Source: Haliotis cracherodii (lineage: Eukaryota). Taken from it: a DNA stretch of 64,000 nt. Positions 19,601 to 55,600 of this stretch are shown one piece after another. The notes under the pieces are model-generated. The model had not been told where the DNA came from, did not search any database, and worked only from the letters and a program-made list of their open reading frames with translations. Numbering within the stretch: position 1 is the first letter of the stretch; each line of letters opens with the position of its first letter. The stretch lies in contig NW_027266275.1 in assembly GCF_022045235.1 (NCBI RefSeq), positions 372,001 through 436,000 of the forward strand, given 5' to 3'. The position numbers and the translations under genes are program-made.

Positions 19601-22600
19601 CGCCATGACACACAGTCGATAAACATATGCAATACTTGAACAAAACACTACTGTGGCGGACTAAACGTTAGTACTCTTACGCCAATAACTGTACAGTGGG
19701 GAAAAGTAAATCTTTCTGGCCAGTCAGATCAGATTTCTTTTTCAAATTGGCTATCTGATACAATAATGGTTACTTGTATATGACATGGGTGCATAATAAA
19801 TAATTGCCTTCATTTGCATGGAGTTCCACATGGCAGAAAAAGATCGAGAAGCGTGGTAACCACTTTACAAATCTCTCCATATTTCGAATCCGTAGCAGTG
19901 CATAAAATATGAGTTACACGATATTAACGCTGAGATGATTAGGGTGATGATGGTTATAATTTCATTCAATGAACGTCATAAATGTAATGGAAATATACAC
20001 TGTCGTTTTCTCATGTGTACCGACCATTCCGCCATTACCAATAGTCAATAAAAATATACAAAACGTGTAAATAAACTTGTTCGTAAAGGAGTGAACAGAA
20101 ATTTATCTATGTGAATAAGTATACAGTTGTGAGAAACATGTATTCTCACCACTCTGGTCATATTATGTGTTATGAACAAGGATTTTGTCTGAAAATATTT
20201 ATGTGTATGTGACATGGGTTCATAAACAAAATTCACCGTCATGCGCTTGGTGTTCAAACATTTCAGAGAAAGGCCGAGAAGCGCGGAAGCCACTTTACTC
20301 ATCTCTCCATATTTCTAATCAATAGCATTGTATAAAGTATGAGTTGCATGATGTTAAAGCTAAGATGATTTGGGTAATGATGGTTATAATTTTGACTTCG
20401 TGCACTCAGTGTTTGATATCTGAATTCAGTTTACAAAGGGCATTTCTCTCGTGACCATATATGGTCCCTTGGCACTATGTGGGTGTGAAAGGTGTGGGAC
20501 CATATAGGGTCCTGTGACACCAAGAGGGTTAAAGTAAATCATTTCTGTTGTGATGTATGAGGACAGCACCCTTAGGACACAAAAGACTCATCAAACACCA
20601 TCTGCTGGGAAACTCACCTGGATCTCGGCCATCTGGATGTAGAAGGTCTCAATCAGAGACGTGGTGTCCATCTTGTGGAAGGTCAGCAGCTCTCGCAACT
20701 CCTAAAAACATAAATAGAATATGTCATCTACTGTAAAAAAATAGACTCTATAAACTCTATGAACTGGATATTTGACGAATTCACACAAAACTGTGGACAA
20801 TTGATGAACTCACCTGGAACTGTTGGGAAAGGATATCCTCCATGTTCAGCCCTTTCCCTTTAGCATGGAAGAAATCGACCAGAAGACCAAGGGCGTCAAA
20901 CATGCGCTGGTAGAAGATGGGCGGTCTCTGGAAGGGAGTTAACACCTTTCTGTAGATTGCACATACACCATGCAAAACAAACAGACGATAGTGGGAATCA
21001 CCAAGGCATATCTTCTGATCTATTTGGTATTGGCAACTGGAGCTGCAATGATCATAACTGTAGGGGAGTAGGCGGTCTGACCTAAAGAGTTCTAGTCAAT
21101 GTTATTGATATCGGGTAAAACCCACCTCTGTTGGCCAGACATGCACAGCTTCATGCTTCTGAAGAGTTGACCAATGTCACCTAGACTACACACCCCCAAC
21201 CCACAAGTATGTACCACCAACCCACAAGAATGTACCACCAACCCACAAGTACACACCCCAAACCCACAGGTATGTACCACCAACCCACAAGTACACACCC
21301 CCAACCCACAAGTACACACCCCCAACCCACAGGTATGTACCACCAACCCACAAGTACGTACCACAAACCCAAGTACGTACCACCAACCCACAAGTACGTA
21401 CCACAAACCCAAGTACGTACCCCCAACCCACAAGTACGTACCCCCAACCCACAAGTACATACCACCAACCCACAAGTACACATCCCCAACCTACAAGTAT
21501 GTACCACCAACCCACAAGTACATACCACAAACCCAAGTACGTACCACCAACCCACAAGTACGTATCAACAACCCACAAGTACGTACCACAAACCCACAAG
21601 TACATACCACCAACCCACAAGTACGTACCACAAACCCAAGTACGTACCCCCAACCCACAAGTACGTACCACCAACCCACAAGTATGTACCACCAACCCAC
21701 AAGTACGTACCACAAACCCACAAGTACGTACCACCTCCTCATTGTCCAGCACATCCTTGAACTCCTCCAACACTTCCACCCATATTGACTCTAAAATTCG
21801 GTCAAAGTTGGTCTTGAGCAGGTTGTTGTTGAGAGTGAGCAGATTGCTGTCCAGGTACTCCAGGAGGTCACCAACCGCCTGGAAATCCCAGAAAAAGACA
21901 CATGAAGACACAAGAGACAGTCAGACACATGTAGACACAGACAGACACATATAGGCACTGATATTTAGACACAGAGATATGTAGACACACAGATATGTCG
22001 ACACAGACATGTGTGGAGGCAGACATGTAAACAGACATATGTTGGCACAGATTCCACTCACATCGTCTGCAGGGAGTGACTCTGGGGCCCAATTCAGGTG
22101 GAACACATCCTTCTTGATGTCAGGACGCATCTATTAACAAAAAGGTTATTTACTAAACATCTATCAGCCAAGTACCATAGGGAATCACAAACACGTACCA
22201 CAGGGTACTTAAGACCCCAAAGACAAGCTCCTTCACAGCCAGCCGACATGGGATCCTCACTGCCTAACACTACTGCCCCGAGGAAAGCTCCTCCAAGGCC
22301 AGCTGTCGGGGTACCTCACTGCCTAACACTACTGCCCCAAGGAAAGCTCCTCCACAGCCAGCTGTCACGGGTACCTCACTGACTAACACTACTGCCCCAA
22401 GGAAAGCTCCTCCACAGCCAGCTGTCACGGGTACCTCACTGACTAACACTACTGCCCCGAGGAAAGCTCCACCACAGCCAGCTGTCACGGGTACCTCACT
22501 GACTAACACTACTGCCCCGAGGAAAGCTCCTCCACAGCCAGCTGTCACGGGTACCTCACTGACTAACACTACTGCCCCGAGGAAAGCTCCTCCACAGCCA

Positions 22601-25600
22601 GCTGTCGGGGTACCTCACTGCGTAACACTACTGCCCCAAGGAAAGCTCCTCCAAGGCCAGCTGTCGGGGTACCTCACTGCCTAACACTACTGCCCCAAGG
22701 AAAGCTCCTCCACAGCCAGCTGTCACGGGTACCTCACTGACTAACTCTACTGCCCCGAGGAAAGCTCCTCCACAGCCAGCTGTCACGGGTACCTCACTGA
22801 CTAACACTACTGCCCCGAGGAAAGCTCCTCCAAGGCCAGCTGTCGGGGTACCTCACTGCGTAACACTACTGCCCCAAGGAAAGCTCCTCCACAGCCAGCT
22901 GTCACGGGTACCTCACTGACTAACACTACTGCCCCGAGGAAAGCTCCTCCACAGCCAGCTGTCACGGGTACCTCACTGACTAACACTACTGCCCCGAGGA
23001 AAGTTCCTCCACAGCCAGCTGTCACGGGTACCTCACTGACTAACACTACTGCCCCGAGGAAAGCTCCTCCACAGCCAGCTGTCACGGGTACCTCACTGAC
23101 TAACACTACTGCCCCGAGGAAAGCTCCTCCACAGCCAGCTGTCGGGGTACCTCACTGCGTAACACTACTGCCCCAAGGAAAGCTCCTCCAAGGCCAGCTG
23201 TCGGGGTACCTCACTGCCTAACACTACTGCCCCAAGGAAAGCTCCTCCACAGCCAGCTGTCACGGGTACCTCACTGACTAACACTACTGCCCCGAGGAAA
23301 GCTCCTCCACAGCCAGCTGTCACGGGTACCTCACTGACTAACACTATTGCCCCGAGGAAAGCTCCTCCACAGCCAGCTGTCACGGGTACCTCACTGACTA
23401 ACACTACTGCCCCGAGGAAAGCTCCTCCACAGCCAGCTGTCGGGGTACCTCACTGCGTAACACTACTGCCCCAAGGAAAGCTCCTCCACAGCCAGCTGTC
23501 ACGGGTACCTCACTGACTAACACTACTTCCCCGAGGAAAGCTCCTCCACAGCCAGCTGTCACGGGTACCTCACTGACTAACACTACTTCCCCGAGGAAAG
23601 CTCCTCCACAGCCAGCTGTCGTGGTACCTCACTGACTAACACTACTGCACCAGGACAGGCTCCTCCACACTACAGCCAGCTGTCGTGGTACCTCACTTAC
23701 TAAAGCCCCTATCTCACATACACGATTTAAGAAATTGCGAACATGATTTAAGAAAAGTTGAAAAATCGTGTTGATTCGTGCTTGACCTTGTGGTTTACGC
23801 AAATTTCTTAACCAAACACGACCATCATACGACCAAAAACGACCCTCATACGACCTTTATAAGACTGAACACAACACTCATACGACCGTCATAAGATACA
23901 ACACGATTTAACCTCATTTAACACGACCCCAATACGACTGTCAAACGACTTAACATGAAAGAACACGACCACCATTCAATTAAACCCGAATCATTACGAT
24001 GTCCATACGACTACAAAAATAAACATGATCTCCATACGACTGAGCAAGACCTTCATACGACATATTTTTTTGTTTATTTTGGTCATGTGGGTCATGTCGT
24101 ATTTAAGCTGCATTGCAACAGCATTTCTGTGTCAGTCTTCACCATGTTCAACAACGAACAAGACCCGCAAGAAGCAGATTTTGGTGGTGGTTCAGAGGTT
24201 TCAGCTGGCTCATATCTTGTCCCTGGGTACCGGTTGGATGTTCACCCATGGATGGTGGTGAAGGATGTTTCCCTTTCGAAGGTTTTGCTTGGAGGAGCTT
24301 CCTTTTCGGCCGCCTGGGGTTTGGCATGGCTGTAGAATGAGCTTTCCCTTTCAGGGGGTTTCCCACGTTCTCACTCAGTCACGTGATGGGCTCTTCTGGT
24401 CGTATGACAAACGTATGGATTTCGTGTTCAGGCGTATAGGAGTCGTATGAAAGGTGTATGAAAGTTATGCTGAATCGTGTTAAAACATATGAAGGTCATA
24501 TGAGTTTCTTCCCACGCTCCCCAACACGATTGAACACGACTGTCATACGACCTTCATACAACTGAACACGACTTTTCAGCTCGGCTTAAATCATGTCATA
24601 AATTTTTGCATTGCATTGCAAAAATTTATAACACGATTCAAGCTGAGCTGCGACGTTTATATGACCACGCGCGACCGACCACGAATGAACAGGAATAAGT
24701 GAGCGACCTTCATACGTTCTAACACAATTTAAGGAAAAACATTACATCGTGTTCATTCGTGAATGTGAGATAAGGGCTTAACACTACTGCCACAGGGCAA
24801 GGTCCTCCACAGCCAGCTGTCACGGGTACCCCACTGATGTACACTACTGCTACCAGGAAAAGCTCTACATCCAGCTGTCGTCATACCTCACTAACACTAC
24901 TGCCCCCAGGACAAGCTCTTCCACAGCCAGCTGTCATGGGTCGTGGGTACCTCACTGACTAACACTACTGCTACCAGGAAAAGCTCTTCCACTGCACAGC
25001 CAGCTGTCGTGGTACCTCCCTGACTAACACTACTTCCCCAAAGACAAGCTCTTCCACTGCACAGCCAGCTGTAACGGATACCCCCCTGACTAACACTACT
25101 TTCCCTGGACAAGCTCCTCCACAGCACAGCCAGCTGTAACGGGTACCTCACTGACTAATACTACTGCCGCCAGGACCAGCTCCTCCACAGCACAGCCAGC
25201 TGTCACGGGTACCTCCCTGACTTAACACCCATTCTCACGAAGAATGTACAATTTCAAATTTAACCTGTCGCTTAGCCACTAGCCGTATATTTTGCATTAA
25301 ATGAACTTGACAGAGAAAGTAAATGTTGGGAATGGTATTGGGAAAGATATTACACTGACATTTTGGTTGCTTTCCAAACCATATTTTTGCAGCATCAGTC
25401 ATAATAGCAACATTTTAGTATAATGTGATTGTTGATTTTAATATCTATCATGAAACGATTGTGATTGGTTAAATGTCCTTATGTTTACGCAAGTTATTCT
25501 TGGTTTTTCAGTACCTCTGATATATCATGCACTAGAATGCCAAATTTCACAGAGCTATCTTATTTAATGACGAAGTTATGCTTGTTAAAAATGTGTCGCC

Positions 25601-28600
25601 AGTTTTCAGGTAAGCTACGTTACTTTATTTCTGTTTGAAACAGCAACTGTCATTTTGAGATATAAAAACAATATAATTGTTCATAGGACATCACGAATAC
25701 AGCAACGTGAGCCAAAGTGGTGACAGGCATCCTGTAATATGTATAAGCACTTTATGTCACGAAAACAGCACCATTTTTGAGAGTTGAGTTAAGCTTGTAA
25801 GCTACGTTACTGCCGATACATAAAAACTGGTCTCCCGATTATGGTACAGGGATTATGCTCATGTTGCCTAAGTGATGTCTGCTTGTCAAAGTAAGAAACA
25901 AGATTGTAAATATATTCCACATGTGTTGAGGGTGTTTTATAGATCGAGATGTAAGCTACATGATGTAAGCTACGTGATGTAAGCTACGTGATGTAAGCTA
26001 CGTGACATCTTGAAATAAAGAGTTAATTACAGGAACATTAAAGGGGCACTGATCTAACGCAATTCCCCGGGACTGGTTGTTGCCTTTGTTATTGTTTTTC
26101 CCCAGTGAGTACCCGGATGTATAGCAGAAATCTAGACTAGTTCGCGACCTCTGCTGCGCCATTCGTAAGCGCATTAGTCGTTTTTATTGTTAGTTATAAG
26201 GGCGTATGGTCAAATTGATCAACAAAATGAAATAGCATCGGTAATGGTGACGAAGTCACTTGCTTGGTAATTTTGCGATTTTCGTTTACACTACTTTGAC
26301 TTGCAACACAAAGTAAATATTTCACCTGAGCATTGCTTTTTTTATAGTGTGTATATTTTTTTTACTGTCAAATGTGTAACACATTTATTAAACGTCTAAA
26401 TATTCAGTTATTTTACAAAGTGACTGAAAAACATTTCCATCTGTATTATCATGATAACAAATTCCAAACAGTTGAAAAGCTTCTAATCCTACATAATAAT
26501 CTGTTGTGATGTTTGTAGGCCTTTTTGATCGTCTTAATCAATCTGGACAGATTTTTTAGTCGAAATGACTGAAATATTTACACATTTTAAAAAAATTGCC
26601 TGAGAGAATCACATTTTACAAATTGACAGTAATATATTCACGCTTACAAAGGAAAAGACCTGTAAAAATAACGTCTATCGCGCATTGAAGAATTTCCCAA
26701 CCAAGACGTAGAGAAACAAGAACGAATCGGTTTAAAAGAAGGAAAACAAAATGCAAATATCATAATTACAACCTACCAAATTTATGTGTATAAATTTTAG
26801 GTAGCTTCCTTGTTCGAGGAATGTATCCGTGAATATCCACACAAAGGAACAATATCCCACTCATCTGCAGCTGTACAAAGAATCTTATTCGATGTCACGT
26901 GTCTCACTAACAATCAAATATTTTAAAAGATATATATCGTTTTGGGATATTATAACCCATGTTCGTTTCTCAACTGATCACTTGGATTGTTTCAGGTGTT
27001 TTACATAGGTGTCACGTCTCAAAGGTCGGCTGAGAAAGCCCATGTGACAACTATTTTCATAACGTCCACGGTTCCTAAAAAATCCATTGAGTGATAGATA
27101 ACAATGATCAATCAATCAACGTATTATCAGATAACCCTTTGAACAAAGTATGTTGTTTTTACATCGGCACTTCACGCCAATATATGAGTGTATTCCCTTT
27201 GTATTAGAAAACCTAGACATGTAAACACTCACTCTTGACATATCCACTGTGCAAGATAACAGTGATTGATCAATCAACATATTTTCTGTTAATCCTTTGA
27301 TGACTAGGAACGATCCGTTGATTTACAAAACGAAGTAAATCAATTGATCATTCATCTCTTGCTGGGCTGACACGTGCATATTACATAACACACATTTCAC
27401 CTCACTTCAAACCTGGATTTAGATTGAATAATTACCCCAGACACAATAAATGCCAAATGGGAACCTTTGTCAGGTAATGTAAGTGGTGCTACCACTAATT
27501 GTACCTGTAATAAATTCATTAACTGAGCATCAAATGAATGACAACAAATACACAAGTGTAGGGTTATACGAGAAAACGTGGATGACAACAAGGGAGTAGT
27601 AATCGTATTATCGACGCAAGCCGAAATCCTTTCACTGCATGGATACTCTTTTTAGTATTAAACTATAACCATCTGGGGTATTTCCAAATGACATCTGATG
27701 AGCTCCGCTGTTCTTTTGGTCTGTTTGTTTAGGCTGAAGAAATTAATTAACATGCGCCCTTTGTCGAAATCTTTATAGATCACAGTTAACCAATCAGTGT
27801 TTATGCAAAAATGCATAAAACAAATCTTGCCTCCAGCCTCCAAGTTTATTTAGCTGTCCTTGCAGATGGTAGCCCAGTCTCTGGTCACGCTCAGTTGCGT
27901 TGCGTATCATCCGGGTACTCACGGGGGAAAAACAATAACAAAGGCAACAACCAGTCTAACCAGGCGTTAGATTAGTGCCCCTTTAAGTCTACAGTTCATG
28001 CCAACACTGAGAAGGCATAAGTGCTAATTCCCACCAATCAGCAGTTGTTCCCCTAGTTTACCACATGTTTCCAGTCAAAACAGGAGATTTCAAGACAGGA
28101 TAAAACAGAATTTCTGAATTAAAAAGGTGAGAATATGTATATATTTTTCTTTTGAAAGATTAATAGGTCAGAATTTACATAAAACTCAAGCATTATTGAA
28201 ATATAAATCACTTGCCTTTTTTACGTTTTTTGGTGTTATAAGTGCATGGCAGTGATGATATGTTTGTTGCTTGAATAAACAATACTAATGTTTTGAAAGC
28301 CATTGAAATCAAAATTTACATGATCTAAAAGGAAATCAATAAATTTGTTGATCAAGTTTTCTCTCCAGATAAATAATTTTCCAATAGTGTTTCAGTATAT
28401 ACAGTTTTTTATAATGTTTGATGCTTATTACTGGTGGTAACGTAGCTTACACATTTTCGGTGAAGAACATATTTGTTACCTGATCTGTGTCATTATGTGT
28501 TTGTTGGTGGACATTTACAAATCCTAGGTGCCAGATGTAATGATGACAGTTTACATTGAAGAGTAAATACTTAGTCTATCCTTGTTAGTCTTGCTGAAAT

Positions 28601-34600: not shown

Positions 34601-37600
34601 GCTTTAAGCAAACACATAACCATGTGCAAACACGTAACCATGTGGCAAAACCACAGAGTACGGGAGACATAATGTAACTCAAAAACTTCGTATTATATTG
34701 AAGTTTATGAGAAGAAACAATTACGCTGAGAGGTAGCGAAAAGGCAAGGCTTTAAGCACACCAAAACAACATACATAAATGTAATGTATTACCCAAGCCA
34801 AAGAGAGAATTCAAAACGCAGAACACGACATTACGTGGCCACGTGGTGAATGGCCAAAATGGCGGGAAAGAAAACAAAATGGCGGGAACAACATTGCGCC
34901 CGTAAATTACTGTGACGTGAGCCACAGACGAGCGATAAACGTTACAATTTACGAATGGGAAGACCCTAAGGTCACGGCCCATAACAGGTAACAATGTAGC
35001 AGCATATAATGAATGTAGAAACACGCAAAATATAAAAAACAAATAATAAGCTTTAATTTCCACAAGGGATACACAGTACGTCCGTCCGTGGAGGTGACAA
35101 AGCAGTTATGTGTTTTTGTGTGACGTCATGACTTCCGGGTCACGTGCCGACTGTGAGAGGGCGCTGCCTCCTGAGCTGGTTGGGACAACTTTCTTCAGCA
35201 GCTGGATCTCACACAGTTCGTCACTCTGTCAAAGACAGCAGTAAATGCAATACGGAGTAATGCAGGATAAGTTAAAAAATTTGTTTGTTTGTTTGTATAG
35301 TATTATGTAATCTACGTGACTGAATAAGTATTTGTTATCTTGCAAAAATGTATTACTTTATTGTTTAGAGTTTCTGACATGTTACTCTTTGTTGATGAAC
35401 GTATAGATACATACGATCATAGGTTGACTTTGTTTTCCTGAATATTAAGGCATGTAGAAATCATTAACAGGTTTTGTTGAAAACAACCGTCTAAAAATTC
35501 TATTTATTGTTTAAAGGTCAGCTCCATCATTGTTAAACAAGATTGGCATACCTTATTTGTGAACAATTAATTACGTGATGGTTTTCTACAAAGTCATAAT
35601 GATAAACAGGAAAACAGAATTGCAATAACTTAACATTTACATTATTTTATAGACATATGGTGGTCACGTAGATTACATCCTCCTTTGTGGGTTAGTGGCA
35701 TAAATAGTTAATAATTTTGTTATTGGCAAAGCTTGAGTGCCAAAATTTTATATACTTGTTTTTTAATGTTCGTTCTACGAATAAAATATCATTTCATGGT
35801 GAAAGCTGAGACTTTAATTTTTCAAGTTTCCAAACTGTAATTGTACATTCTTCGTGAGAATGGGTGTTAATCTACTGCCACAGGACAAGGTCCTCCATAG
35901 CAAGCTGTCACGGGTACCTCCCTGACAAACACTACTGCCACCAGGACCAGCTCCTCCACAAACAGCTGTCACAGGTACCTCAGTCACTGACACTACCGCC
36001 CAAAGTACAAGCTCCTCCAAGGCCAGCCGTCACGGGTACCTCACTGACTAACACTACTGCCACCAGGAAAACCTCCTCCACAGCACAGTCAGCTGTCATG
36101 GGTACCTCACTGACTAACACTACTGCCACAGGACAAGGTCCTCCACAGCCAGCTGTCACGGGTACCTCAGTCACTGACACTACCGCCCAAAGTACAAGCT
36201 CCTCCAAGGCCAGCCGTCACAGGTACCTCACAGACTAACACTACTGCCACCAGGACAAGCTCCTCCATAGCAAGCTGTCACGGGTACCTCCCTGACAAAC
36301 ACTACTGCCACCAGGACCAGCTCCTCCACAAACAGCTGTCACAGGTACCTCAGTGACTGACACTACTAACCAAAGGACAAGCTCCTCCAAGGCCAGCTGT
36401 CACGGGTACCTCACTGACTAACACTACTGCCACCAGGACAAGCTCCTCCACAGCCAGCTGTCACGGGTACCTCACTGACTAACACTACTGCCACCAGGAC
36501 AAGCTCCTCCATAGCAAGCTGTCACGGGTACCTCCCTGACAAACACTACTGCCACAAGGACCAGCTCCTCCACAAACAGCTGTCACAGGTACCTCAGTGA
36601 CTGACACTACCACCCAAGGACAAGCTCCTCCAAGGCCAGCTGTCACGGGTACCTCACTTTGAAGTTAGGTTCAATGACAATTGTATTCAGGCAGATTACA
36701 GAAATCTAGATAATAACCCAAATACTGAACAAATAGACTACTACAAGAAGCCAAAATTGGAAATATTGTCGCTAAGGTCGGCAATGCCTGATGAGGTGAG
36801 GTGAAATGGGGTTTAACGTCGCGTCCAAGATTATTGCACTTATAAAGGGATGTGCATGTACGTGTGTGTGTTTGTGTGGCTGCTTGTACTAGTCCGGACT
36901 GATGCCGATTTATAGTGCTGGCTCACTGAGATACCATGCCGCAGTTTAACATGAATTCCCAACTCAGACACAGTATACTGACTCCGAGCCGACCAGTCCT
37001 TGTTTTAGCCCCTTAATGCAGAGCGCCAGACAGGGTAACAACAAGTACCATCTTTTAACGTCTTTTGGTATGACGCGGTCGGGGATCGAACCCCGGACCT
37101 TCCACTCTCCGGGCGGACGCTCTACCACTAGACCACGGAGGCGGTCCAATGCCTGATGAAGCACTACAGGTCGTGAGATACACTATAGAACCTCAAATAG
37201 TAGAAGAAGATAGGAATAAACCATGGGTATGGATGGAAAAGTTACGTATTTTCTATACAGGGACCGTCGGTAGTTCATTGATTACAGATAGATTCAGATT
37301 TTGGAATACTAATCAGCTACCACACGAAACAGTACAAGAATGGGAGGTCAAGGTCAGACAATCAGGTAGCTTGTGTGCCTATGCAGCAGTAGGAGATGGA
37401 ATGTGTCGTGACAAATTTGTATTTGGTCTGCATGACAGCAACATTAGAACTGAACTTTTAAAGACACACTTGAAATCAGACAATAGTAAAAAGTTATTGT
37501 CAGATGTTGTCAGTGAAGCCAAAGCCCTTGAATCTGCACAGAAGGCAAATAAACTTATTGATGAATCATCCAAGAATATTGATTAACAGGTACACTGGAC

Positions 37601-40600: not shown

Positions 40601-43600
40601 TTGGAAGACACTCTCTCCGTTACAGTGATAGCCAAAACAAAGGCTCATTTCTCTCGCTATGGGATTCCGAGTGTGTGTCATACAGACAATGGACCTCAGT
40701 TCATCAGCAAAGAATACGAAGACTTTGCTCAGCAGTATCACTTCAAGCACACAACGTCTTCACCATATCATCCACAAGTAAATGGAAAGGCTGAGTCAGC
40801 TGTCAAAGTGGCAAAAGCTATGATGAAGAAATCTGATGACAAAGAACTGGTATTCTTGAACTACAGAAATACTCCTCAAAAGGGACATACCTATTCACCT
40901 GCCCAATGCATGATGAACCGTCGAACAAGGACTTTGCTGCCGACACCTAATCAACTTCTGCAGCCCCAGGTAGTGGATCCCGAAATAGTTTATAGAGAGA
41001 TCAGGGGCAAAAGAATCTCTAGCAAGACTCAGTACGATAGATCGTCTGGTACAGAGCATGAACCAATAGAAACTGGCAGTTATGTGTATGCTAAACCTCC
41101 ACCAAACCAGAGAGGAAAACCTTGGGCATATGGACAAGTCATCCACAAGGACAATACAAGGTCTTACACAATAAAAACCCATGGTAGCACACTGAGAAGA
41201 AACCGTGTGCAAATCAAGCCAGCAGCTGCGCCACCACCATCAAACAACTACAACTCATCACAGAGGGCGCTTAATCAACTGATCTTGAAGAATGCCGAAG
41301 TCCAAACAGCTGTACCAAGTTCACCCATGAAACCTGTGACAGATCGAAGTGTAACAGCCCAAGCCAGCCCTAACATTACACAGAATGTAGAACAATCAAA
41401 GACTACACAGCCAGGTTTTCAACCTACAGAAAGTGTCACAGATATTACCAAGATATCTGAAGAGAATTGCTCAGTAAAACGTCCACTCAGGGAAAAAAGA
41501 TTCCCTTTAAGATACAATGACTATATAATGCTTGAGTGAATTGATGTAATAATTGTCAACATGGACATGCATGAATTACTGTCCTGAACTTTGAGGCAAG
41601 ACTATAGGATGCGGTTGCATATACAGACAGTGCCTGTGTGAACTAAGCAGATACATTTCACAAACTGATCATTGCAGCTGTTGAGAGCTTTTAATGGTTA
41701 CAATTGTTTAATATCATTTGAGTTAAAGGAGACATACTCTCTTTCTTTTTCTTCTTCTTTTTTTTTGTTTCTTCCAAAGGACGGCAGATGTTAGTATGTT
41801 CATTTCCGAGTTATTCCAATTGTTGGAAATACGAAGTATTGCGAATGTCAGGCCGGAAGTAGCATGGTCGGGTATCCCTAAAAGATATGATCGAGTCCCG
41901 GTGTATCATCAGGCGTAATAAAGCCTCTGCAAATCAAGACAACTGAACTGTGTCTTTATCATTGGTCCAACGAGGTTGGAAACTGTATCTCACTGACTAA
42001 CACTACTGCCACCAGGAAAAGCTCCTCCACAGCACAGCCAGCTGTCGTAGTACCTCACTGACTAACACTACTGCCACCAGGAAAAGCTCCTCCACAGCAC
42101 AGCCAGCTGTCGTAGTACCTCACTGACTAACACTACTGCCACCAGGAAAAGCTCCTCCACAGCACAGCCAGCTGTCGTAGTACCTCACTGACTAACACTA
42201 CTGTCACCAGGAAAAGCTCCTCCACAGCACAGCCAGCTGTCGTAGTACCTCACTGACTAACACTACTGTCACCAGGAAAAGCTCCTCCACAGCACAGCCA
42301 GCTGTCGTAGTACCTCACTGACTAACACTACTGCCACCAGGAAAAGCTCCTCCACAGCACAGCCAGCTGTCGTAGTACCTCACTGACTAACACTACTGCC
42401 ACCAGGAAAAGCTCCTCCACAGCACAGCCAGCTGTCGTAGTACCTCACTGACTAACACTACTGCCACCAGGAAAAGCACCTCCACAGCACAGCCAGCTGT
42501 CGTAGTACCTCACTGACTAACACTACTGCCACCAGGAAAAGCTCCTCCACAGCACAGCCAGCTGTCGTAGTACCTCACTGACTAACACTACTGCCACCAG
42601 GAAAAGCTCCTCCACAGCACAGCCAGCTGTCGTAGTACCTCACTGACTAACACTACTGCACCCAGGACAAGCATCTCCACAGCCATCTTTCATGGGTACC
42701 GCACTGACTAACAATACTGTCCCCAGTACGAGCTCCTCACAGGAATTCCTTTCAAATCGTTTGACATATCCCATTTTGTTGATGTAACATGTTATACATT
42801 GTCTTTCTTGTTAAAAAAACATAACAAAAAGTCCAGGAACTTCCAGTCACATTGAGTTACCTCCCTTATACTACATAGCAATATGACCTTCAAGGCCATA
42901 CACAGTCACTCTGAATTATCTCCCGTTCACTACACAGCAATATGGCCTTGAGGCCTTACAGTCACCTCAGGGTTCAAAATTAAGGGACGCTAAGATGCCA
43001 GATACGTGTTAATTTATGATTTTGCATCTATAAATCAAAATCAAGACGACATTTTTTGCGTCTTGCATTTTTCCATTTCAAAATCGGTTGAGAAATACCT
43101 AAATTCACTGTGATAACTTTTGATTTAACGAAGATTTTCCTTGATTTGTTTACCTCTAGTTTAGAGTTACCTCCCCATTTGCGTTTCCCGGGAAAACATT
43201 TCACTTCCTTTCTTTCTGTTCAACAATGGTGAACATGGACTATTCCGAGCTCTTTTTGACCAATGAACATATAGCACGGAGATTAATATTATGCAAATGA
43301 CGTATGTCTATTTTCGAGAGACCAATCAAATGCTGTAAAAACCATGTCACCGGTAATTTATTCAAAAGACCCAAGGTCGTTTCTTTTTTTAGATGACATC
43401 CCATCCTAGAGTCCCCAGACAACCCCTTGGCTGGTTGACCTACCATGCAGTCACGTCAAATAAGTATATAATTTTATGAACCTACCTGTCATATCATTTA
43501 TTTATTAAATCTATCACATTTCACAACGTCGTATCAAATCCGTATTCCATTTGATTTGATCATTTTTTATCTATAGATCAAAAAATTATTCACTATTTCC

Positions 43601-46600: not shown

Positions 46601-49600
46601 CCAAGACACAGCAGGATATGTCAAACAAAACTACAAAAGGAAGTTGACCATGGCAGGATGTCAAGCCCTTCAAGGACATCCCCCTGGACAACCTCCAAGT
46701 CTCCTCAATAGGCCTGGTGCAAAAGAAGCAGCCAGGCCACGTTCAACAATCCGGTAAGCATGCCGATGATTTCCGTCTACTTCACCATTTTTTTTATCCC
46801 AAGGGCAATTCTATAAAGGAATATGCCTGCTCCATGGTGTATGCCAGGTTTGATGATGCTATAAATATGGTTCAACAACTGGGAAAGGGAGCATTACAAG
46901 CAAAATTTGACATTAAGACAGCCTTTAGAATTTTAACATTAGAAGGTGAATTCTATTTTGATAAATAATTACCATTCCGATGCTCCATATCTTGTGGCAT
47001 ATTGGATACATTTAGTACCTTCTTACAATGATGCATGCAATCCCACCTCCAAACGTGCCAGATCATGCATTTCCTGGCCGACTTCCTAACGGAGGCACAG
47101 CAGGCACTGATTATTTGACAACCTCAGCTGATGTGTACATACACTTGAACAGTTTGAATTCACTACTGCCCACAACCAGACTGTCAGCCCCAGTACATAA
47201 CAGACTTTCTTAGGGTTCGACATTAACACGAATGCAATGCTGATCAGAATCCCGGAGTCCAAGATCAAGGAGGTGACAGCCGAAATCCAAGCCATCCTGT
47301 CGACAGGTAACACAAAGGTCACTAAAAGGGCCCTTTAGTCAATCATAGGTTGGCTTAATTCTATGTGCAGGGCTGGCTGGGGCTTCTAGCCATAGGCTAA
47401 TCGACCTGCTCAGCAAAGGTAAGCAACCATTTCGCCACATTACCGACTGGGTCAAGGAAGACTTACAAATGTGGTTAACATTTCTCACCGGTAATAATGG
47501 CATTTTAGTGTTTAAGGATCAACTATGGGTAGACCTACAACAATCTCTGTCTGAGAACAAATAATCACCATACTACAAAGGTATCAATGCCTTACAACAG
47601 TTCTGGTCTGCATATCATCTACAGGTGTGGATCTGGTTGTTAACTTTATTGCTAACCCGTCCGTCCTAACACAGTCCAGACTTACAATGCTGCGCTGTCT
47701 TCACAACACAAATTCTGCAGGCTCACTGATTGTACAAACCATTTCCTGGTGGGTGAGCTATTAACAGACTTATACAAATCGGCGGTCTGACTAGACAGCA
47801 GAAAATCCATCAAGGCAGATCTGCTGCGGGTAGAAACCAGCCTTCTTGTGGGTTCTTTAGGGTTAGCTAGCTGGTCCAAACTGGACCCTCCAAACCAGGT
47901 TGCTCCATCCACAATGTTAGTTTCTCTGGTAATCCCCAACAGCTATCAATCCATCTCCCACACTCATAGTGTGATCAGTACAATATTGAGGCAACAGTTA
48001 CAATGTCACCTATACCAGGTAATCCACTATGTCCCGTAGTCGCCACAAAGTACCATCTTGAGGCGTGCCCCTCTGGCCCACAACAGACATTTGTTGATTT
48101 CGTTCATTCCCCCACTACTAGGTACCAATTCCAGGCACTGCTTTAAAAGGCCTTAGCTGTGGTAGCTGCCACAATGGTTTTCCAAATTGGTCCAGGAAGC
48201 GGTAGCTGCCAACTATGCTATCTTGGGTTAGGCAGTGGAAGCTGCCTTAGGCCAGCAACGGTAGCTGTTATTGGCAGCGCAGTAGTTGCCAAGCATCGAT
48301 CACGTTTCTTATAACTAAATCTGCTACAGTATGCAGCAGTACTTGCCATTCACATTGGTAGCTTTTCGTGTAATTTACTCGCAGCTTAGTAGCCGACTAG
48401 CACCTGCACACCATCGGCCAGTTAATCCACTCTCATGTCGCTTTGTTCTTATAGTCACGGGCATCCACAGTTTGGTAGCCCGTACCTCACCTTTGGCATA
48501 TCATGTGATATCTGGTAATTGTGGGCTGCTTTAAAGAAGCCCAAGCAGCAGTCAGCGGCAGTCTGGCCTGCTCAGTGACCCCACCTCTCCACGGAATTCC
48601 TTTCACACCAAGGGATCTGCACCTCCAAAATGAAATCTAAGTCCTATTGCTTGTCTGGTGCAACTTACCTGCTCAGAGATATCAAACTGCCCCTCGTCAT
48701 CATAGTAGCCAGCAGCAGTCAGCTTCTCATGCACCAAGTCCGCATACAGCTGAGCCCCATTGCTGATGTCCTGCAGATCAAATGAGGTACAGTGAGTTAA
48801 AATTGCAATAGAGTACAAAGGGTGAGGGTGAGGACAGAGAATGGGGAAGAGGGGGGAGGTGAGGGTCTATTACCTCAACAAGTCGGTGTACAAACTGGTA
48901 GGCTCCCACCAGATCTGGCCAGGACAGCTGCTTCCAGAACTCAGTGATCTGAAGATATGAAAACACCAACAGTCAGGACTACATCAACGTTGAGGTGGAG
49001 TGGGTCAAACATGGCCATCCAAACTGCCATTATCTGGTTTTCACTTGTATGTCCTCAGGACTAAAATAAGCTCTTTGCCCCAACCCCTCCATCCTCTTGT
49101 AGGTTTATTGACATGAGGAGGAGAGATCCTCTTGCAATGGAAGTGTTATAACGGATGTGAAGAGATCCCTTCTCTCTCTCCCTGTTCCTGCTCACCTGGG
49201 CAAAGCAACAGCACACATCCACAGCAGACGTGCTGTACTTCACCACAGCATCCACCTGGGCCACCTGAAGGCAGAAAACAACATGCATTCACAAGCAGTT
49301 AACTCCATACATTCAACAGCAGTTAACTCCCTACATCCCACAGCAGTGAACTCCCTACATCCCACAGCAGTGAACTACATACAGTTCACAGCAGTAAACT
49401 CCATACAGTTCACAGCAGTAAACTCCATACAGTTCACAGCAGTAAACTTCATACAGTTCACAGCAGTAAACTCCATACAGTTCACAGCAGTAAACTTCAT
49501 ACAGTTCACAGCAGTAAACTCCATACATTCCCCCACAGTTAACTCCATACAGTTCATAGCAGTAAACTCCATACATTCCACCACAGTTAACTACATACAG

Positions 49601-52600
49601 TTCACAGCAGTAAACTCCATACAGTTCACAGCAGTAAACTCCATACAGTTCACAGCAGTAAACTTCATACAGTTCACAGCAGTAAACTCCATACATTCCC
49701 CCACAGTTAACTCCATACAGTTCATAGCAGTAAACTCCATACATTCCACCACAGTTAACTCCATACAGTTCATAGCAGTAAACTCCATACATTCCCCCAC
49801 AGTTAACTCCATACAGTTCATAGCAGTAAACTCCATACATTCCACAGCAGTAAACTCCATACAGTTCACAGCAGTAAACTCCATACATTCCCCCACAGTT
49901 AACTCCATACAGTTCATAGCAGTAAACTCCATACATTCCCCCACAGTTAACTCCATACAGTTCATAGCAGTAAACTCCATACATTCCCCCACAGTTAACT
50001 CCATACAGTTCATAGCAGTAAACTCCATACATTCCCCCACAGTTAACTCCATACAGTTCATAGCAGTAAACTCCATACATTCCACAGCAGTAAATTCCAT
50101 ACAGTTCATAGCAGTAAACTCCATACACTCCACCACAGTTAACTCCATACAGTTCATAGCAGTAAACTCCATACATTCCACAGCAGTAAATTCCATACAG
50201 TTCATAGCAGTAAACTTCATGCAATCCTCAGCAGTAAACTCCATACAGTTCATAGCAGTAAACTTCATACAGTTCATAGCAGTAAACTCCATACAGCTCA
50301 CAGCAGTAAACTCCATACAGTTCACAGCAGTAAACTCCATACATTCCCCCACAGTTAACTTAATACAGCTCACAGCAGTAAACTCCATACAGTTCACAGC
50401 AGTAAACTCCATACATTCCCCCAGTTAACTTAATACAGCTCACAGCAGTAAACTCCATACATTCCCCACAGTTAACTCCATACAGCTCACAGCAGTAAAC
50501 TCCATACATTCCACCACAGTTAACTCCATACAGTTCATAGCAGTAAACTCCATACAGTTCATAGCAGTAAACTCCATACATTCCCCCACAGTTAAATCCA
50601 TACAGCTCACAGCAGTAAACTCCATACATTCCCCCACAGTTAACTCCATACAGTTCATAGCAGTAAACTCCATACATTCCACAGCAGTAAACTCCATACA
50701 GTTCACAGCAGTAAACTCCATACATTCCCCCACAGTTAACTCCATACAGTTCATAGCAGTAAACTCCATACATTCCCCCACAGTTAACTCCATACAGTTC
50801 ATAGCAGTAAACTCCATACATTCCCCCACAGTTAACTCCATACAGTTCATAGCAGTAAACTCCATACATTCCCCCACAGTTAACTCCATACAGTTCATAG
50901 CAGTAAACTCCATACATTCCACAGCAGTAAATTCCATACAGTTCATAGCAGTAAACTTCATACAATCCTCAGCAGTAAACTCCATACAGTTCATAGCAGT
51001 AAACTTCATACAGTTCATAGCAGTAAACTCCATACAGCTCACAGCAGTAAACTCCATACGGTTCACAGCAGTAAACTCCATACATTCCCCCACAGTTAAC
51101 TTAATACAGCTCACAGCAGTAAACTCCATACAGTTCACAGCAGTAAACTCCATACATTCCCCCACAGTTAACTTAATACAGCTCACAGCAGTAAACTCCA
51201 TACATTCCCCACAGTTAACTCCATACAGCTCACAGCAGTAAACTCCATACATTCCACCACAGTTAACTCCATACAGTTCATAGCAGTAAACTCCATACAG
51301 TTCATAGCAGTAAACTCCATACATTCCCCCACAGTTAAATCCATACAGCTCACAGCAGTAAACTCCATACATTCCACCACAGTTAACTCCATATACAGTT
51401 CATAACAGTAAACTCCATACAGTTCACAGCAGTAAACTCCATACAGTTCACAGCAGTAAACTCCATACATTCCCCCAGTTAAATCCATACAGTTCATAGC
51501 AGTAAACTCCATACAGTTCATAGCAGTAAACTCCATACAGCTCACAGCAGTAAACTCCATAGAGTTCATAGCAGTAAACTCCATACATTCCACAGCAGTA
51601 AATTCCATACAGTTCATAGCAGTAAACTTCATACATTCCTCAGCAGTTAAGTCCATACATGAACATGAACCCCACCGGGTCTGACCTTATCAAGTTACAC
51701 ATGGATCCCACTGGGTCTGACCGTATCGAGCTACACATGGATCCTACTGGGTCTGACCTGATCAAGCTCCACATGGATCCCACTGGGTCTGACCGTATCA
51801 AGCTACACATGGATCCTACTGGGTCTGAACTTATCAAGCTCCACTTGGATCCTTCTGGGTCTGACCTTATCAAGCCCCACATGAACCCTACTGGGTCTGA
51901 CCGTATCAAGCTTCACTTGGATCCTTGTGGGTCTGACCGTATCAAGCTCCACAAGGATCCTTGTGGGTCTGACCTTATCAAACTCCACAAGGATCCCAGT
52001 GGGTCTGACCTTATCAAGCTCCACAAGGATCCTGCTTAGTCTGACCTTATCAAGCTCCACATGGATCCTACTGGGTCTGACCTTATTAAGCCCAACATGA
52101 ACCCCACCGGGTCTGACCTTATCAAGCTACACATGGATCCTACTGGGTCTGACCTTATCAAGTTACACATGGATCCTACTGGGTCTGACCGTATCAAGCT
52201 ACACATGGATCCTACTGGGTCTGAACTTATCAAGCTCCACTTGGATCCTTCTTGGTCTGACTTTATCAAGCCCCACATGAACCCTACTGGGTCTGACCTT
52301 ATCAAGTTCCACAGCTTTGCGGATCCTCTTGAGAGCCTTGTGTCTGGCGATGCAGAGCCACTTGCTGACAGCGAAGCCAAACCACTCATAGTACTGGCAG
52401 ATGGCCAGACTCCTCAGCTCTCTGTCAGGAGGAAGGATGGAAGATTAACTTAGGCTTTGACCAATTATGGATTTGTCCTGAGTGAAATTAAAGTTTTCAG
52501 TCACAAGGGGGGACATTTAAACATTAATGTTGTTGGTGTCTCAATACTGATGTATTCTACATGACATATTACCCAGGTGGCAAGGTGTGTCTCACTGTAC

Positions 52601-55600
52601 AAGCCTGGTGTATTCTACATGTAATACTACCCAGGTGGCAAGGTGTGTCTCACTGTACAAGACTTGTGTATTCTACATGTTATACTACCCAGGTGGCAAG
52701 GTGTGTCTCACTGTACAAGACTGGTGTATTCTACATGTAATACTACCCAGGTGGCAAGGTGTGTCTCACTGTACAATACTGGTGTATTCTACATGTAATA
52801 CTACCCAGGTGGCAAGTTGTAGTTGTGTCTCACTGTACAAGACTGATGTATTCTACATGTAATACTACCCAGGTGGCAAGGTGTGTCTCACTGTACAATA
52901 CTGGTGTATTCTACATGTAATACTACCCAGGTGGCAAGGTGTGTCTCACTGTACAAGACTGATGTATTCTACATGTAATACTACCCAGGTGGCAAGGTGT
53001 GTCTCACTGTACAAGACTGATGTATTCTAAATGTAATACTACCCAGGTGGCAAGGTGTGTCTCACTGTACAATACTGGTGTATTCTACATGTAATACTAC
53101 CCAGGTGGCAAGTTGTAGTCGTGTCTCACTGTACAAGACTGATGTATTCTACATGTAATACTACCCAGGTGGTAAGTTGTGTCTCACTGTACAAGACTGA
53201 TGTATTCTACATGTAATACTACCCAGGTGGCAAGGTGTGTCTCACTGTACAAGACTGATGTATTCTACATGTAATACTACCCAGGTGGCAAGGTGTGTCT
53301 CACTGTACAATACTGGTGTATTCTACATGTAATACTACCCAGGTGGCAAGGTGTGTCTCACTGTACAAGACTGATGTATTCTACATGTAATACTACCCAG
53401 GTGGCAAGGTGTGTCTCACTGTACAAGACTGATGTATTCTACATGTAATACTACCCAGGTGGCAAGGTGTGTCTCACTGTACAATACTGGTGTATTCTAC
53501 ATGTAATACTACCCAGGTGGCAAGTTGTAGTTGTGTCTCACTGTACAAGACTGATGTATTCTACATGTAATACTACCCAGGTGGCAAGGAGTGTCTCACT
53601 GTACAAGACTGATGTATTCTACATGTAATACTACCCAGGTGGTAAGTTGTAGGTGTGTCTCACTGTACAAGACTGATGTATTCTACATGTTATACTACCC
53701 AGGTGGCAAGGTGTGTCTCACTGTACAATACTGGTGTATTCTACATGTAATACTACCCAGGTGGTAAGTTGTAGTTGTGTCTCACTGTACAAGACTGATG
53801 TATTCTACATGTAATACTACCCAGGTGGTAAGTTGTAGTTGTGTCTCACTGTACAAGACTGATGTATTCTACATGTAATACTACCCAGGTGGCAAGTTGT
53901 AGTTGTGTCTCACTGTACAAGTCTGATGTATTCTAAATGTAATACTACCCAGGTGGCAAGTTGTAGTTGTGTCTCACTGTACAAGACTGATGTATTCTAC
54001 ATGTAATACTACCCAGGTGGTAAGTTGTAGGTGTGTCTCACTGTACAAGACTGATGTATTCTACATGTAATACTACCCAGGTGGCAAGGTGTGTCTCACT
54101 GTACCAGACTGATGTATTCTACATGTAATACTACCCAGGTGGCAAGGTGTGTCTCACTGTACAAGACTGATGTATTCTACATGTAATACTACCCAGGTGG
54201 TAAGTTGTAGGTGTGTCTCACTGTACAAGACTGATGTATTCTACACGTAATACTACCCAGGTGGTAAGTTGTGTCTCACTGTACAAGACTGATGTATTCT
54301 ACATGTAATACTACCCAGGTGGCAAGTTGTAGTTGTGTCTCACTGTACAAGACTGATGTATTCTACATGTAATACTACCCAGGTGGCAAGGAGTGTCTCA
54401 CTGTGCAAGACTGATGTATTCTACATGTAATACTACCCAGGTGGCAAGGTGTGTCTCACTGTACAAGACTGATGTATTCTACACGTAATACTACCCAGGT
54501 GGCAAGTTGTAGGTGTGTCTCACTGTACAAGACTGATGTATTCTACATGTAATACTACCCAGGTGGTAAGTTGTAGGTGTGTCTCACTGTACAAGACTGA
54601 TGTATTCTACATGTAATACTACCCAGGTGGTAAGTTGTAGGTGTGTCTCACTGTACAAGACTGATGTATTCTACATGTAATACTACCCAGGTGGTAAGTT
54701 GTGTCTCACTGTACAAGACTGATGTATTCTACATGTAATACTACCCAGGTGGTAAGTTGTAGTTGTGTCTCACTGTACAAGACTGATGTATTCTACATGT
54801 AATACTACCCAGGTGGCAAGGTGTGTCTCACTGTACAATACTGGTGTATTCTACATGTAATACTACCCAGGTGGCAAGGAGTGTCTCACTGTACAAGACT
54901 GATGTATTCTACATGTAATACTACCCAGGTGGTAAGTTGTGTCTCACTGTACAAGACTGATGTATTCTACATGTAATACTACCCAGGTGGTAAGTTGTAG
55001 TTGTGTCTCACTGTACAAGACTGATGTATTCTACACGTAATACTACCCAGGTGGCAAGGTGTGTCTCACTGTACAAGACTGATGTATTCTACATGTAATA
55101 CTACCCAGGTGGCAAGGTGTGTCTCACTGTACAAGACTGATGTATTCTACACGTAATACTACCCAGGTGGCAAGGTGTGTCTCACTGTACAAGACTGATG
55201 TATTCTACATGTAATACTACCCAGGTGGCAAGGTGTGTCTCACTGTACAAGACTGATGTATTCTACACGTAATACTACCCAGGTGGCAAGGTGTGTCTCA
55301 CTGTACAAGACTGATGTATTCTACATGTAATACTACCCAGGTGGTAAGTTGTAGGTGTGTCTCACTGTACAAGACTGATGTATTCTACATGTAATACTAC
55401 CCAGGTGGCAAGGTGTGTCTCACTGTACACGACTGATGTATTCTACATGTAATACTACCCAGGTGGCAAGTTGTTGGAGTATCTGGCAAACTCCTGCAAG
55501 GCAAGGTACAGCTCAAACAAGGTGGTGCCCATGGTTTGGGGTGGGGCGCCCAAGCTGTCCAGTTCCCGGTCGCAGTCCATCTTCTTGAGGATGACAGAGA

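What the first reader, a model, noticed from the sequence alone, without database searches (positions are those of the whole stretch)
21188..55474. Splice-donor-seeded minisatellites: three introns start with tandem amplifications of their own exon/5' splice-site junction
Seen: at 3 of the 16 complete introns in the window (donors at 55459, 52298, 21732) a tandem array starts exactly at the donor. Each unit is the last 4-16 nt of the exon plus the first 15-46 nt of the intron, so about 48, 18 and 25 units sit behind the real donor, most retaining the GT. The three units (58, 36, 21 bp) are unrelated, so these are independent events. In two arrays the distal copies are the most diverged, suggesting growth from the exon side. 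A fourth donor (13263) shows a micro version (gtgagtgagtgaatgaa). Established: tandem duplication across a splice site is a proposed route to intron gain and alternative 5' splice sites. Inference: a process in this lineage may nucleate or retain tandem duplications at exon-intron borders (nucleosome/methylation boundary, R-loop or Pol II pausing), creating batteries of competing donors. I do not know of a description of this as a systematic phenomenon, but cannot search the literature here.
Basis: partly seen in the sequence, partly recalled or inferred. Interest (0 to 1): 0.85.

Follow-up and report, generated by a model that had tools for sequence, protein, structure and literature searches.

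The report
Splice-junction "mirage" minisatellites in abalone BAIAP3
Three introns of a black-abalone nerve-secretion gene (BAIAP3) really are filled with head-to-tail copies of their own exon end plus splice donor. This repeat type is already known as a "mirage" minisatellite in lancelets and in human F7, so it is a new animal group for a known thing.

Summary
The minus-strand gene is Haliotis cracherodii BAI1-associated protein 3-like. Its RefSeq protein maps at 100% identity onto 33 exons, and the exons end at 55459, 52298 and 21732 as claimed.

Arrays of 49, 18 and 26 units start 16-22, 15-17 and 4 nt inside those exons. 49/49, 16/18 and 24/26 units keep the GT. The exon-derived parts of arrays 1 and 2 encode conserved residues, and both arrays are unique in the 1.18-Gb genome.

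- The phenomenon is described: "mirage" minisatellites in amphioxus, and the human F7 intron-7 VNTR.
- It is not donor-specific. The same gene has two more donor arrays and two acceptor arrays outside the window.
- All RefSeq isoforms in four Haliotis species splice from the first copy.

Against even placement, donor-spanning arrays are enriched more than 10-fold. Most of that comes from arrays concentrating in short introns and near exons. Shuffling arrays inside their own introns leaves a 2-4-fold donor excess (p 0.001-0.06).

This scan had already found the same thing at least 13 times on other DNA of this genome. I could get no RNA reads and no orthologous DNA.

The parts
55459..55625 (-). 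BAIAP3-like coding exon 19 (167 nt). It ends ...AACAACTTGCCACCTGG | gtagta, in phase 2.
   Evidence: Exact mapping of RefSeq protein P0144 and a unique GT-AG solution. The join NNLPPG|ELRS is gap-free against scallop P0009 and all Haliotis isoforms.
52522..55474 (-). Array 1: 49 copies of a 58/64-bp unit, made of the last 16-22 nt of exon 19 plus the first 42 nt of intron 19. It fills 96% of the 3037-nt intron. All copies keep TGG|GTAGTA. An in-frame TAG follows the first donor at once.
   Evidence: TRF gives 52542-55474. Unit list (the last, degenerate copy starts at 52580). No copy elsewhere in the genome.
52298..52421 (-). Coding exon 20 (124 nt). It ends ...GTGGAACTTGATAAG | gtcaga, in phase 0.
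   Evidence: The join AVELDK|VAQV is identical in all homologues.
51663..52313 (-). Array 2: 18 copies of a 36-bp unit, made of the last ~15 nt of exon 20 plus the first ~21 nt of intron 20. 16 of 18 copies keep GT. Units 1-6 recur as units 12-18 (higher-order duplication).
   Evidence: TRF, unit list, locus-specific in the genome.
49288..51659 (-). 24-bp x99 array filling the rest of intron 20. It ends 23 nt before the acceptor of exon 21. Homology of that last 23 nt to the unit is only borderline.
   Evidence: TRF, sequence, alignment against shuffles p=0.07.
21732..21878 (-). Coding exon 26 (147 nt). It ends ...GAGGAGGTG | gtacgt, in phase 0.
   Evidence: The join NEEV|RPPIFY is found in all isoforms.
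21192..21735 (-). Array 3: 26 copies of a 21-bp (some 19-bp) unit, GTACGTACTTGTGGGTTGGTG. It starts at the first intron base and shares only GGTG with the exon. 24 of 26 copies keep GT. The host reading frame stays open through the whole array.
   Evidence: TRF, unit list, ORF 21189-21920. GT-rich look-alike arrays of 65-74% identity exist elsewhere in the genome, so exon derivation is weak here.
13247..13263 (-). Start of intron 30: gtgagtgagtgaatgaa, i.e. (GTGA)3 at a GTGAGT donor. This is microsatellite-scale slippage, not an array.
   Evidence: Sequence. RefSeq isoform X4 (P0145) reads into it and ends ...LDANGE*.

Best explanation
These are 'mirage' minisatellites: locally born tandem duplications whose unit happens to include an exon edge and its splice site.

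Proposed sequence of events:
1. A short duplication (21-64 bp) arose in what was a short intron. The unique DNA left in the three introns is about 100, 10 and 260 nt.
2. The mRNA stayed unchanged, because the exon-adjacent (most upstream) copy of a run of identical 5' splice sites is the one used.
3. The duplication was therefore tolerated and expanded by slippage or unequal exchange to 18-49 copies. This inflated the introns to 0.8-3 kb.
4. The mirror-image case, with the last acceptor copy used, occurs at two acceptors of the same gene.

The arrays are most likely by-products without a function of their own.

Shown here: the anatomy, the independence of the arrays, their local origin, and the unchanged protein models.

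Inferred: the duplication and expansion mechanism, neutrality, and the first-copy rule (taken from the human F7 experiments).
For: Gene model and origin of the units:
- The exon ends are fixed by exact mapping of RefSeq protein P0144.
- The unit lists show exon-end plus GT plus intron-start in every copy.
- The exon part encodes conserved residues, so the exon is the source and the array the copy.
- Arrays 1 and 2 exist nowhere else in 1.18 Gb, and the units are unrelated to each other. These are separate local events.

Recurrence:
- The same gene carries further junction-spanning arrays. Donor of intron 12: 31 bp = 24 exon + 7 intron nt. Donor of intron 14: 47 bp, with homology reaching 11 nt into the exon, p<0.001. 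Acceptors of introns 6 (45 bp x38) and 9 (83 bp x11).
- An unrelated myosin gene, sampled blind, has a 79-bp x7 donor array.

Splicing outcome:
- All 13 RefSeq proteins of four Haliotis species join the exons as if the arrays were absent.

Placement:
- Within short introns, array placement fits random placement (Fisher p=0.25).

Literature:
- Mirages in amphioxus do not disturb splicing (PMC3087553, PMC3902484).
Against: - No RNA reads could be laid, so use of the first donor rests on gene models, which favour the open frame.
- Arrays 2 and 3 would add in-frame residues if a later donor were used. Such minor isoforms, or NMD-cleared ones from array 1, cannot be excluded.
- Plain neutral seeding does not by itself explain two results. 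Arrays are ten times denser per unique base in short introns (4.3 against 0.43 per kb, p 9e-11). Terminal arrays in long introns hug the splice sites (Fisher p 2.6e-4).
- A residual 2-4-fold donor excess remains after within-intron shuffling.
- Array 3 shares only 4 nt with its exon and resembles GT-rich arrays elsewhere.
Confidence: 0.7

Rival explanations
1. A junction-linked mutational process seeds tandem duplications preferentially at or next to exon-intron borders in this lineage. Candidates are transcription- or splicing-coupled events such as Pol II pausing or R-loops at 5' splice sites, or an exon-marked chromatin or methylation boundary. On this view the arrays are the footprint of a hotspot and not random duplications that were merely tolerated.
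For: - Against even placement along the gene's introns, 5 donor-spanning arrays are seen where 0.28-0.43 are expected (p 1e-5 to 9e-5).
- In the half of the gene outside the window, which was not picked for this feature, 5 array starts lie within -25..+35 nt of 16 donors against 0.58 expected (p 3e-4).
- Arrays are ten times denser per unique base in short introns.
- In long introns the terminal arrays lie closer to splice sites than chance (Fisher p 2.6e-4; donors p 0.002).
- After within-intron shuffling, donors are still 2-4-fold over expectation.
- Tandem triples of AGGTRAGT occur 7884 times genome-wide, against 5157 for the reversed motif.
- Earlier notes of this scan report the same pattern in other genes. 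These are leads only.
Against: - The sample is one gene plus a few myosin exons.
- The within-intron test loses significance when larger exon overlaps are allowed (p 0.06-0.35).
- Acceptor-spanning arrays are at or below expectation.
- DNA next to exons is older and is protected from transposon insertion. It may therefore simply have had more time to seed arrays than the transposon-rich interior of long introns.
- The genome-wide motif excess is only 1.5-fold and counts copies, not arrays.
- A compact myosin gene cluster has no arrays at all.
- No mechanism was tested.
Confidence: 0.22
2. The arrays are functional. The repeated donors would recruit U1 snRNP to strengthen weak genuine donors or protect long introns. 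Alternatively they would serve as regulated alternative 5' splice sites that give stepwise length isoforms: +12 aa per unit in array 2, +7 aa per unit in array 3.
For: - Arrays 2 and 3 keep the host frame open for 3 units and for the whole array respectively.
- Three of the five mirage donors are off-consensus (GTCAGA twice, GTAGTA).
Against: - No isoform with such inserts appears among 13 RefSeq proteins of four Haliotis species.
- Donor strength does not differ between mirage donors and the other donors (p 0.3-0.6).
- Array 1 meets an in-frame stop at once.
- GT is lost in some copies of arrays 2 and 3, with no sign of constraint.
- Comparable pseudo-sites in human F7 are silent (PMC1557585).
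Confidence: 0.05
3. Coincidence or artefact. The arrays would be ordinary intronic minisatellites that abut donors by chance in a genome that is about 36% tandem repeat, or they would be assembly artefacts.
For: - Repeat density is very high: 77 arrays, 36% of 214 kb.
- Array 3 overlaps its exon by only 4 nt and has look-alikes elsewhere.
- No reads could be checked.
Against: - Arrays 1 and 2 contain 15-22 nt of conserved coding sequence in every unit and occur nowhere else.
- Seven junction-spanning arrays occur in one gene.
- The interspersed 58/64-bp variants and the higher-order structure look like real array evolution.
Confidence: 0.03

Closest known systems
'Mirage' minisatellites of amphioxus (Adh3, troponin C, globins BflGb6/BflGb9, PGBD5)
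   Same: They are tandem repeats whose unit spans an exon-intron boundary, at donors and at acceptors. Units are tens of bp long. Many but not all copies keep GT/AG. Normal splicing is undisturbed, and the boundary copy is excluded from homogenisation (PMC3087553, PMC3902484).
   Different: The host here is a mollusc and the gene is BAIAP3-like. Copy numbers are much higher (18-49, against 3-6 in the globins). Seven such arrays sit in one gene, and some introns consist almost wholly of them. Length polymorphism and somatic instability, which were shown in amphioxus, could not be tested here.
Human F7 intron 7 (IVS7) 37-bp VNTR
   Same: The first repeat element spans the exon-intron boundary, so the authentic donor is followed by identical 5' pseudo-sites that stay silent (PMC1557585). 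That paper supplies the tested rule that the most upstream site is selected, which would make the abalone arrays harmless.
   Different: F7 has a handful of repeats in a single mammalian gene, and its behaviour was shown by minigene experiments. In abalone nothing was tested at the RNA level. Array 1 has a far weaker donor (TGG|GTAGTA).
Intron gain or alternative splice sites by tandem duplication across AG|GT (Rogers model; cases in PMC3265369, PMC2891723, PMC4974935)
   Same: A tandem duplication includes a splice-site motif.
   Different: In those cases the duplication creates a new intron inside an exon. Here the intron positions are old (shared with scallop) and the duplicates only lengthen existing introns. 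No new intron or exon is seen.

Membership tests
Mirage (splice-junction) minisatellite | Head-to-tail array of a short unit (minisatellite scale) | tested here: met
   TRF gives 58 bp x48.8, 36 bp x18.1 and 21 bp x26.3. Units are listed in register.
Mirage (splice-junction) minisatellite | The unit spans a genuine exon-intron boundary (exon edge + splice signal + intron edge) | tested here: met
   Boundaries are fixed by exact protein mapping. Arrays 1 and 2 carry 15-22 nt of conserved coding sequence. For array 3 alone this feature is inconclusive: it has 4 nt of exon and look-alikes elsewhere.
Mirage (splice-junction) minisatellite | Many but not all copies keep the GT/AG signal | tested here: met
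   49/49, 16/18 and 24/26 copies keep GT.
Mirage (splice-junction) minisatellite | Regular splicing uses the exon-adjacent copy and the mRNA is unaffected | tested here: inconclusive
   All 13 RefSeq protein models of four Haliotis species have gap-free joins. These are models, not reads.
Mirage (splice-junction) minisatellite | Length instability or polymorphism between haplotypes | not testable with these tools
   Only one assembly was available.
F7-IVS7-type silent pseudo-donor array | [quoted passage not shown] | not testable with these tools
   This needs minigene or RNA data. Only the sequence identity of the pseudo-sites to the genuine site was shown.

The most novel reading that the evidence does not exclude
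In abalone, tandem arrays may be born preferentially at and next to splice junctions through a transcription-, splicing- or chromatin-linked mutational process, and not merely tolerated there. Mirage minisatellites would then be a systematic, genome-wide driver of intron growth in this lineage, and a natural library of thousands of competing splice sites.
Probability: 0.25. Interest if true: 0.65.

Novelty: new member of a known kind. Interest (0 to 1): 0.4.

Why it matters
- It extends mirage minisatellites from lancelets and one human gene to a mollusc, at unusual density: seven junction-spanning arrays in one 200-kb gene.
- It shows how short introns can grow ten- to thirty-fold without touching the mRNA.
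- The arrays are natural experiments on splice-site choice: up to 49 identical donors or 38 identical acceptors in a row.
- They are also a trap for gene prediction and read mapping.
- The unexplained concentration of arrays near exons is the part worth a genome-wide test.

Tried and rejected
Tools that did not run:
- Unbiased genome sample of exons through Pfam hits: only the myosin-head set could be cut out.

Ideas tested and dropped:
- Pfam on single exons gave only weak C2 and PATROL1-like hits. A homologue search was needed instead.
- Weak donors favour mirages: rejected (p 0.3-0.6).
- A divergence gradient as a sign of growth from the exon side: rejected for arrays 1 and 2.
- Arrays that start 10-34 nt after donors (introns 6, 7, 11, 25) or end 23 nt before acceptors (introns 18, 20) are decayed junction copies: not supported (p 0.07-0.4).
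- The units are transposon-borne: rejected for arrays 1 and 2.

Handling of spliced sequence:
Exons were searched one by one.
- Junctions were checked only inside a script, against the RefSeq protein.
Full report
WHAT IS THERE

The window is G000:C12:372001-436000 of the black abalone genome. It is extremely rich in minisatellites.

On the minus strand lies a Munc13-family gene. A scallop homologue (P0009) found with one exon led to the Haliotis cluster. That cluster contains the species' own RefSeq proteins, BAI1-associated protein 3-like, isoforms X1-X4 (P0144, P0142, P0149, P0145).

P0144 maps at 100% identity onto 33 coding exons spread over about 200 kb (C12:379540-578586). Each of the 32 junctions has a single GT-AG solution.

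THE THREE ARRAYS

- Array 1. Exon 19 ends TGG|GTAGTA at 55459. There are 49 copies of a 58-bp unit, with a 64-bp variant that preserves CTACAACTTGCCACCTGG, 17 of 18 bases of the exon end. Every copy carries the identical donor nonamer. An in-frame TAG follows the first donor directly.
- Array 2. Exon 20 ends AAG|GTCAGA at 52298. There are 18 copies of a 36-bp unit that includes GTGGAGCTTGATAAG, 14 of 15 bases of the exon end. 16 copies keep GT. Units 1-6 recur as units 12-18, so whole blocks including the first unit have been re-duplicated.
- Array 3. Exon 26 ends GTG|GTACGT at 21732. There are 26 copies of a 21-bp unit that begins at the first intron base and shares only GGTG with the exon. 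24 copies keep GT.

The exon parts of arrays 1 and 2 encode NLPPG and AVELDK. These align without gaps to scallop ENLPSG and AVELDK and to all Haliotis proteins. The exon is therefore the source and the array the derivative.

Arrays 1 and 2 have no other copy in the 1.18-Gb genome. Array 3 has GT-rich look-alikes of 65-74% identity elsewhere, so its exon origin is the weakest of the three. The units are unrelated to one another.

- Arrays 1 and 2 show no divergence gradient (rho 0.04 and -0.09). Only array 3 does, mildly.
- The phenomenon is not donor-only. After fetching the rest of the gene I found two further donor-spanning arrays. Intron 12 has a 31-bp unit of 24 exon nt plus GTGAGTT. Intron 14 has a 47-bp unit whose homology reaches 11 nt into the exon, p<0.001.
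- I also found two clean acceptor-spanning arrays. Intron 6 has a 45-bp unit x38, made of 26 intron nt plus the first 19 nt of exon 7. Intron 9 has an 83-bp unit x11, including about 40 nt of exon 10. tblastn sees residues 403-417 nine extra times there.
- A blind sample of myosin-head exons gave one more donor array in an unrelated gene: L041, 79 bp x7, made of 19 exon nt plus 60 intron nt. A compact tandem cluster of muscle myosin genes had no arrays at all.

IS IT MORE THAN CHANCE?

It depends on the null model.

- Even placement. If arrays are placed evenly along the gene's intronic DNA, 0.28-0.43 donor-spanning arrays are expected and 5 are seen (p 1e-5 to 9e-5). In the half of the gene outside the window, which was not chosen for this feature, 5 array starts lie within -25..+35 nt of 16 donors against 0.58 expected (p 3e-4).
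- Short introns. The introns concerned contain almost nothing but repeats. The unique remainder is about 104, 10 and 260 nt.
- Shuffling within introns. If arrays are shuffled only within their own introns, 1.2-2.4 donor-spanning arrays are expected against 5 seen (p 0.001-0.06, depending on how much exon overlap is allowed). Acceptors are at expectation. For both junction types together p is 0.002-0.35.
- Density. What is robust is that arrays are ten times denser per unique base in short introns: 4.3 against 0.43 per kb, p 9e-11.
- Long introns. Even there, the terminal arrays lie closer to the splice sites than chance (Fisher p 2.6e-4; 2e-4 outside the window).
- Genome-wide motif. Tandem triples of the consensus AGGTRAGT occur 1.5 times as often as the reversed motif (7884 against 5157). 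This signal is weak and copy-weighted.

So array edges do concentrate near exons in this gene. The evidence for nucleation exactly at the donor is only suggestive. Older, transposon-free DNA next to exons could explain part of the pattern.

HOW IT MOST LIKELY WORKS

A short tandem duplication in a short intron happens to include the exon edge and splice site. The exon-adjacent copy continues to be used, so the mRNA is unchanged. The array is then free to expand by slippage or unequal exchange.

- Shown: anatomy, local origin, independence of the arrays, and unchanged protein models. All 13 RefSeq proteins of H. cracherodii, H. rufescens, H. asinina and H. rubra join NNLPPG|ELRS (with species variants), VELDK|VAQV and NEEV|RPPI without inserts.
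- Inferred: neutrality and the first-copy rule. [quoted passage not shown]
- Donor strength does not distinguish mirage donors from the others.

COMPARISON WITH WHAT IS KNOWN

Tandem repeats spanning exon-intron boundaries were named 'mirages' in amphioxus Adh3. They have since been reported in troponin C, globin and PGBD5 genes, at both donors and acceptors, without disturbing splicing (PMC3087553, PMC3902484). The human F7 VNTR has the same build (PMC1557585).

I found no description for molluscs in the held library. One abalone paper mentions an ordinary intronic minisatellite only (PMC6905558).

Earlier follow-ups of this scan reached the same identification in at least a dozen other places of this genome. 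I used their term and the F7 hint as leads, and checked the papers myself.

LIMITS

Junctions were verified in a local script only.

VERDICT

This is a new member of a known kind, of moderate interest. The open and interesting part is the exon-proximal concentration of arrays.

Noticed in passing
G000:C12:488580-490288 (intron 6 / exon 7) and C12:468304-469692 (intron 9 / exon 10), outside the window; loci L014 and L012: There are two acceptor-spanning arrays in the same gene. One is 45 bp x38 (26 intron nt + first 19 exon nt). The other is 83 bp x11 or more (about 40 intron nt + about 40 exon nt). The last copy is the acceptor used in the RefSeq model.
   Followed up: yes
G000:C12:460971-461572 (intron 12) and C12:439418-440978 (intron 14); loci L011 and L009: There are two more donor-spanning arrays in BAIAP3. 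One is a 31-bp unit of 24 exon nt plus GTGAGTT (x17). The other is a 47-bp unit containing CTGTCGTAAAG|GTCAGACA (x33).
   Followed up: yes
L041:1707-2273 (G000:C12:62024306-62024872): An unconventional myosin exon ends ...ECNFPQ|gtcagt and is followed by 7 copies of a 79-bp unit, made of 19 exon nt plus 60 intron nt. It was found by blind sampling of Pfam myosin-head hits.
   Followed up: partly
G000:C12:64.58-64.96 Mb (loci L026-L040, L043-L053): A tandem cluster of at least 14 muscle-type myosin heavy chain genes has short introns and no tandem arrays at all in 23 sampled loci. Array load therefore differs sharply between genes.
   Followed up: no
window 58675-58710 (-): A 36-nt cassette exon encodes LAADISQGLEEE. 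It is present in RefSeq isoforms X1, X3 and X4 and skipped in X2, in three Haliotis species.
   Followed up: partly
window 13247-13264 (-): RefSeq isoform X4 (P0145) reads through the exon-30 donor into (GTGA)3 and ends ...LDANGE*. That is intron retention or early termination, which removes the C-terminal C2 domain.
   Followed up: no
window 22225-23669, 24779-25228, 35872-36658, 41985-42683: Four arrays of one related 60-65-bp unit are scattered through the 22.8-kb intron 24. This is a dispersed, probably transposon-borne satellite family, unlike the locus-specific junction arrays.
   Followed up: no
window 55649-55975 (-): A 34-bp x9 array ends 23 nt before the acceptor of exon 19. Its unit carries GTGAGT and GTAAGT on the gene strand. 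No significant homology to the junction was found (p 0.24).
   Followed up: partly
They were only observed.
   Followed up: no
window 55459-55475 (-): The last codons of exon 19, the part copied into array 1, differ between congeners: LPPG in H. cracherodii and H. rufescens, LQHG in H. rubra, FQQG in H. asinina. The surrounding residues are identical. Exchange between array and exon is conceivable but untested.
   Followed up: no
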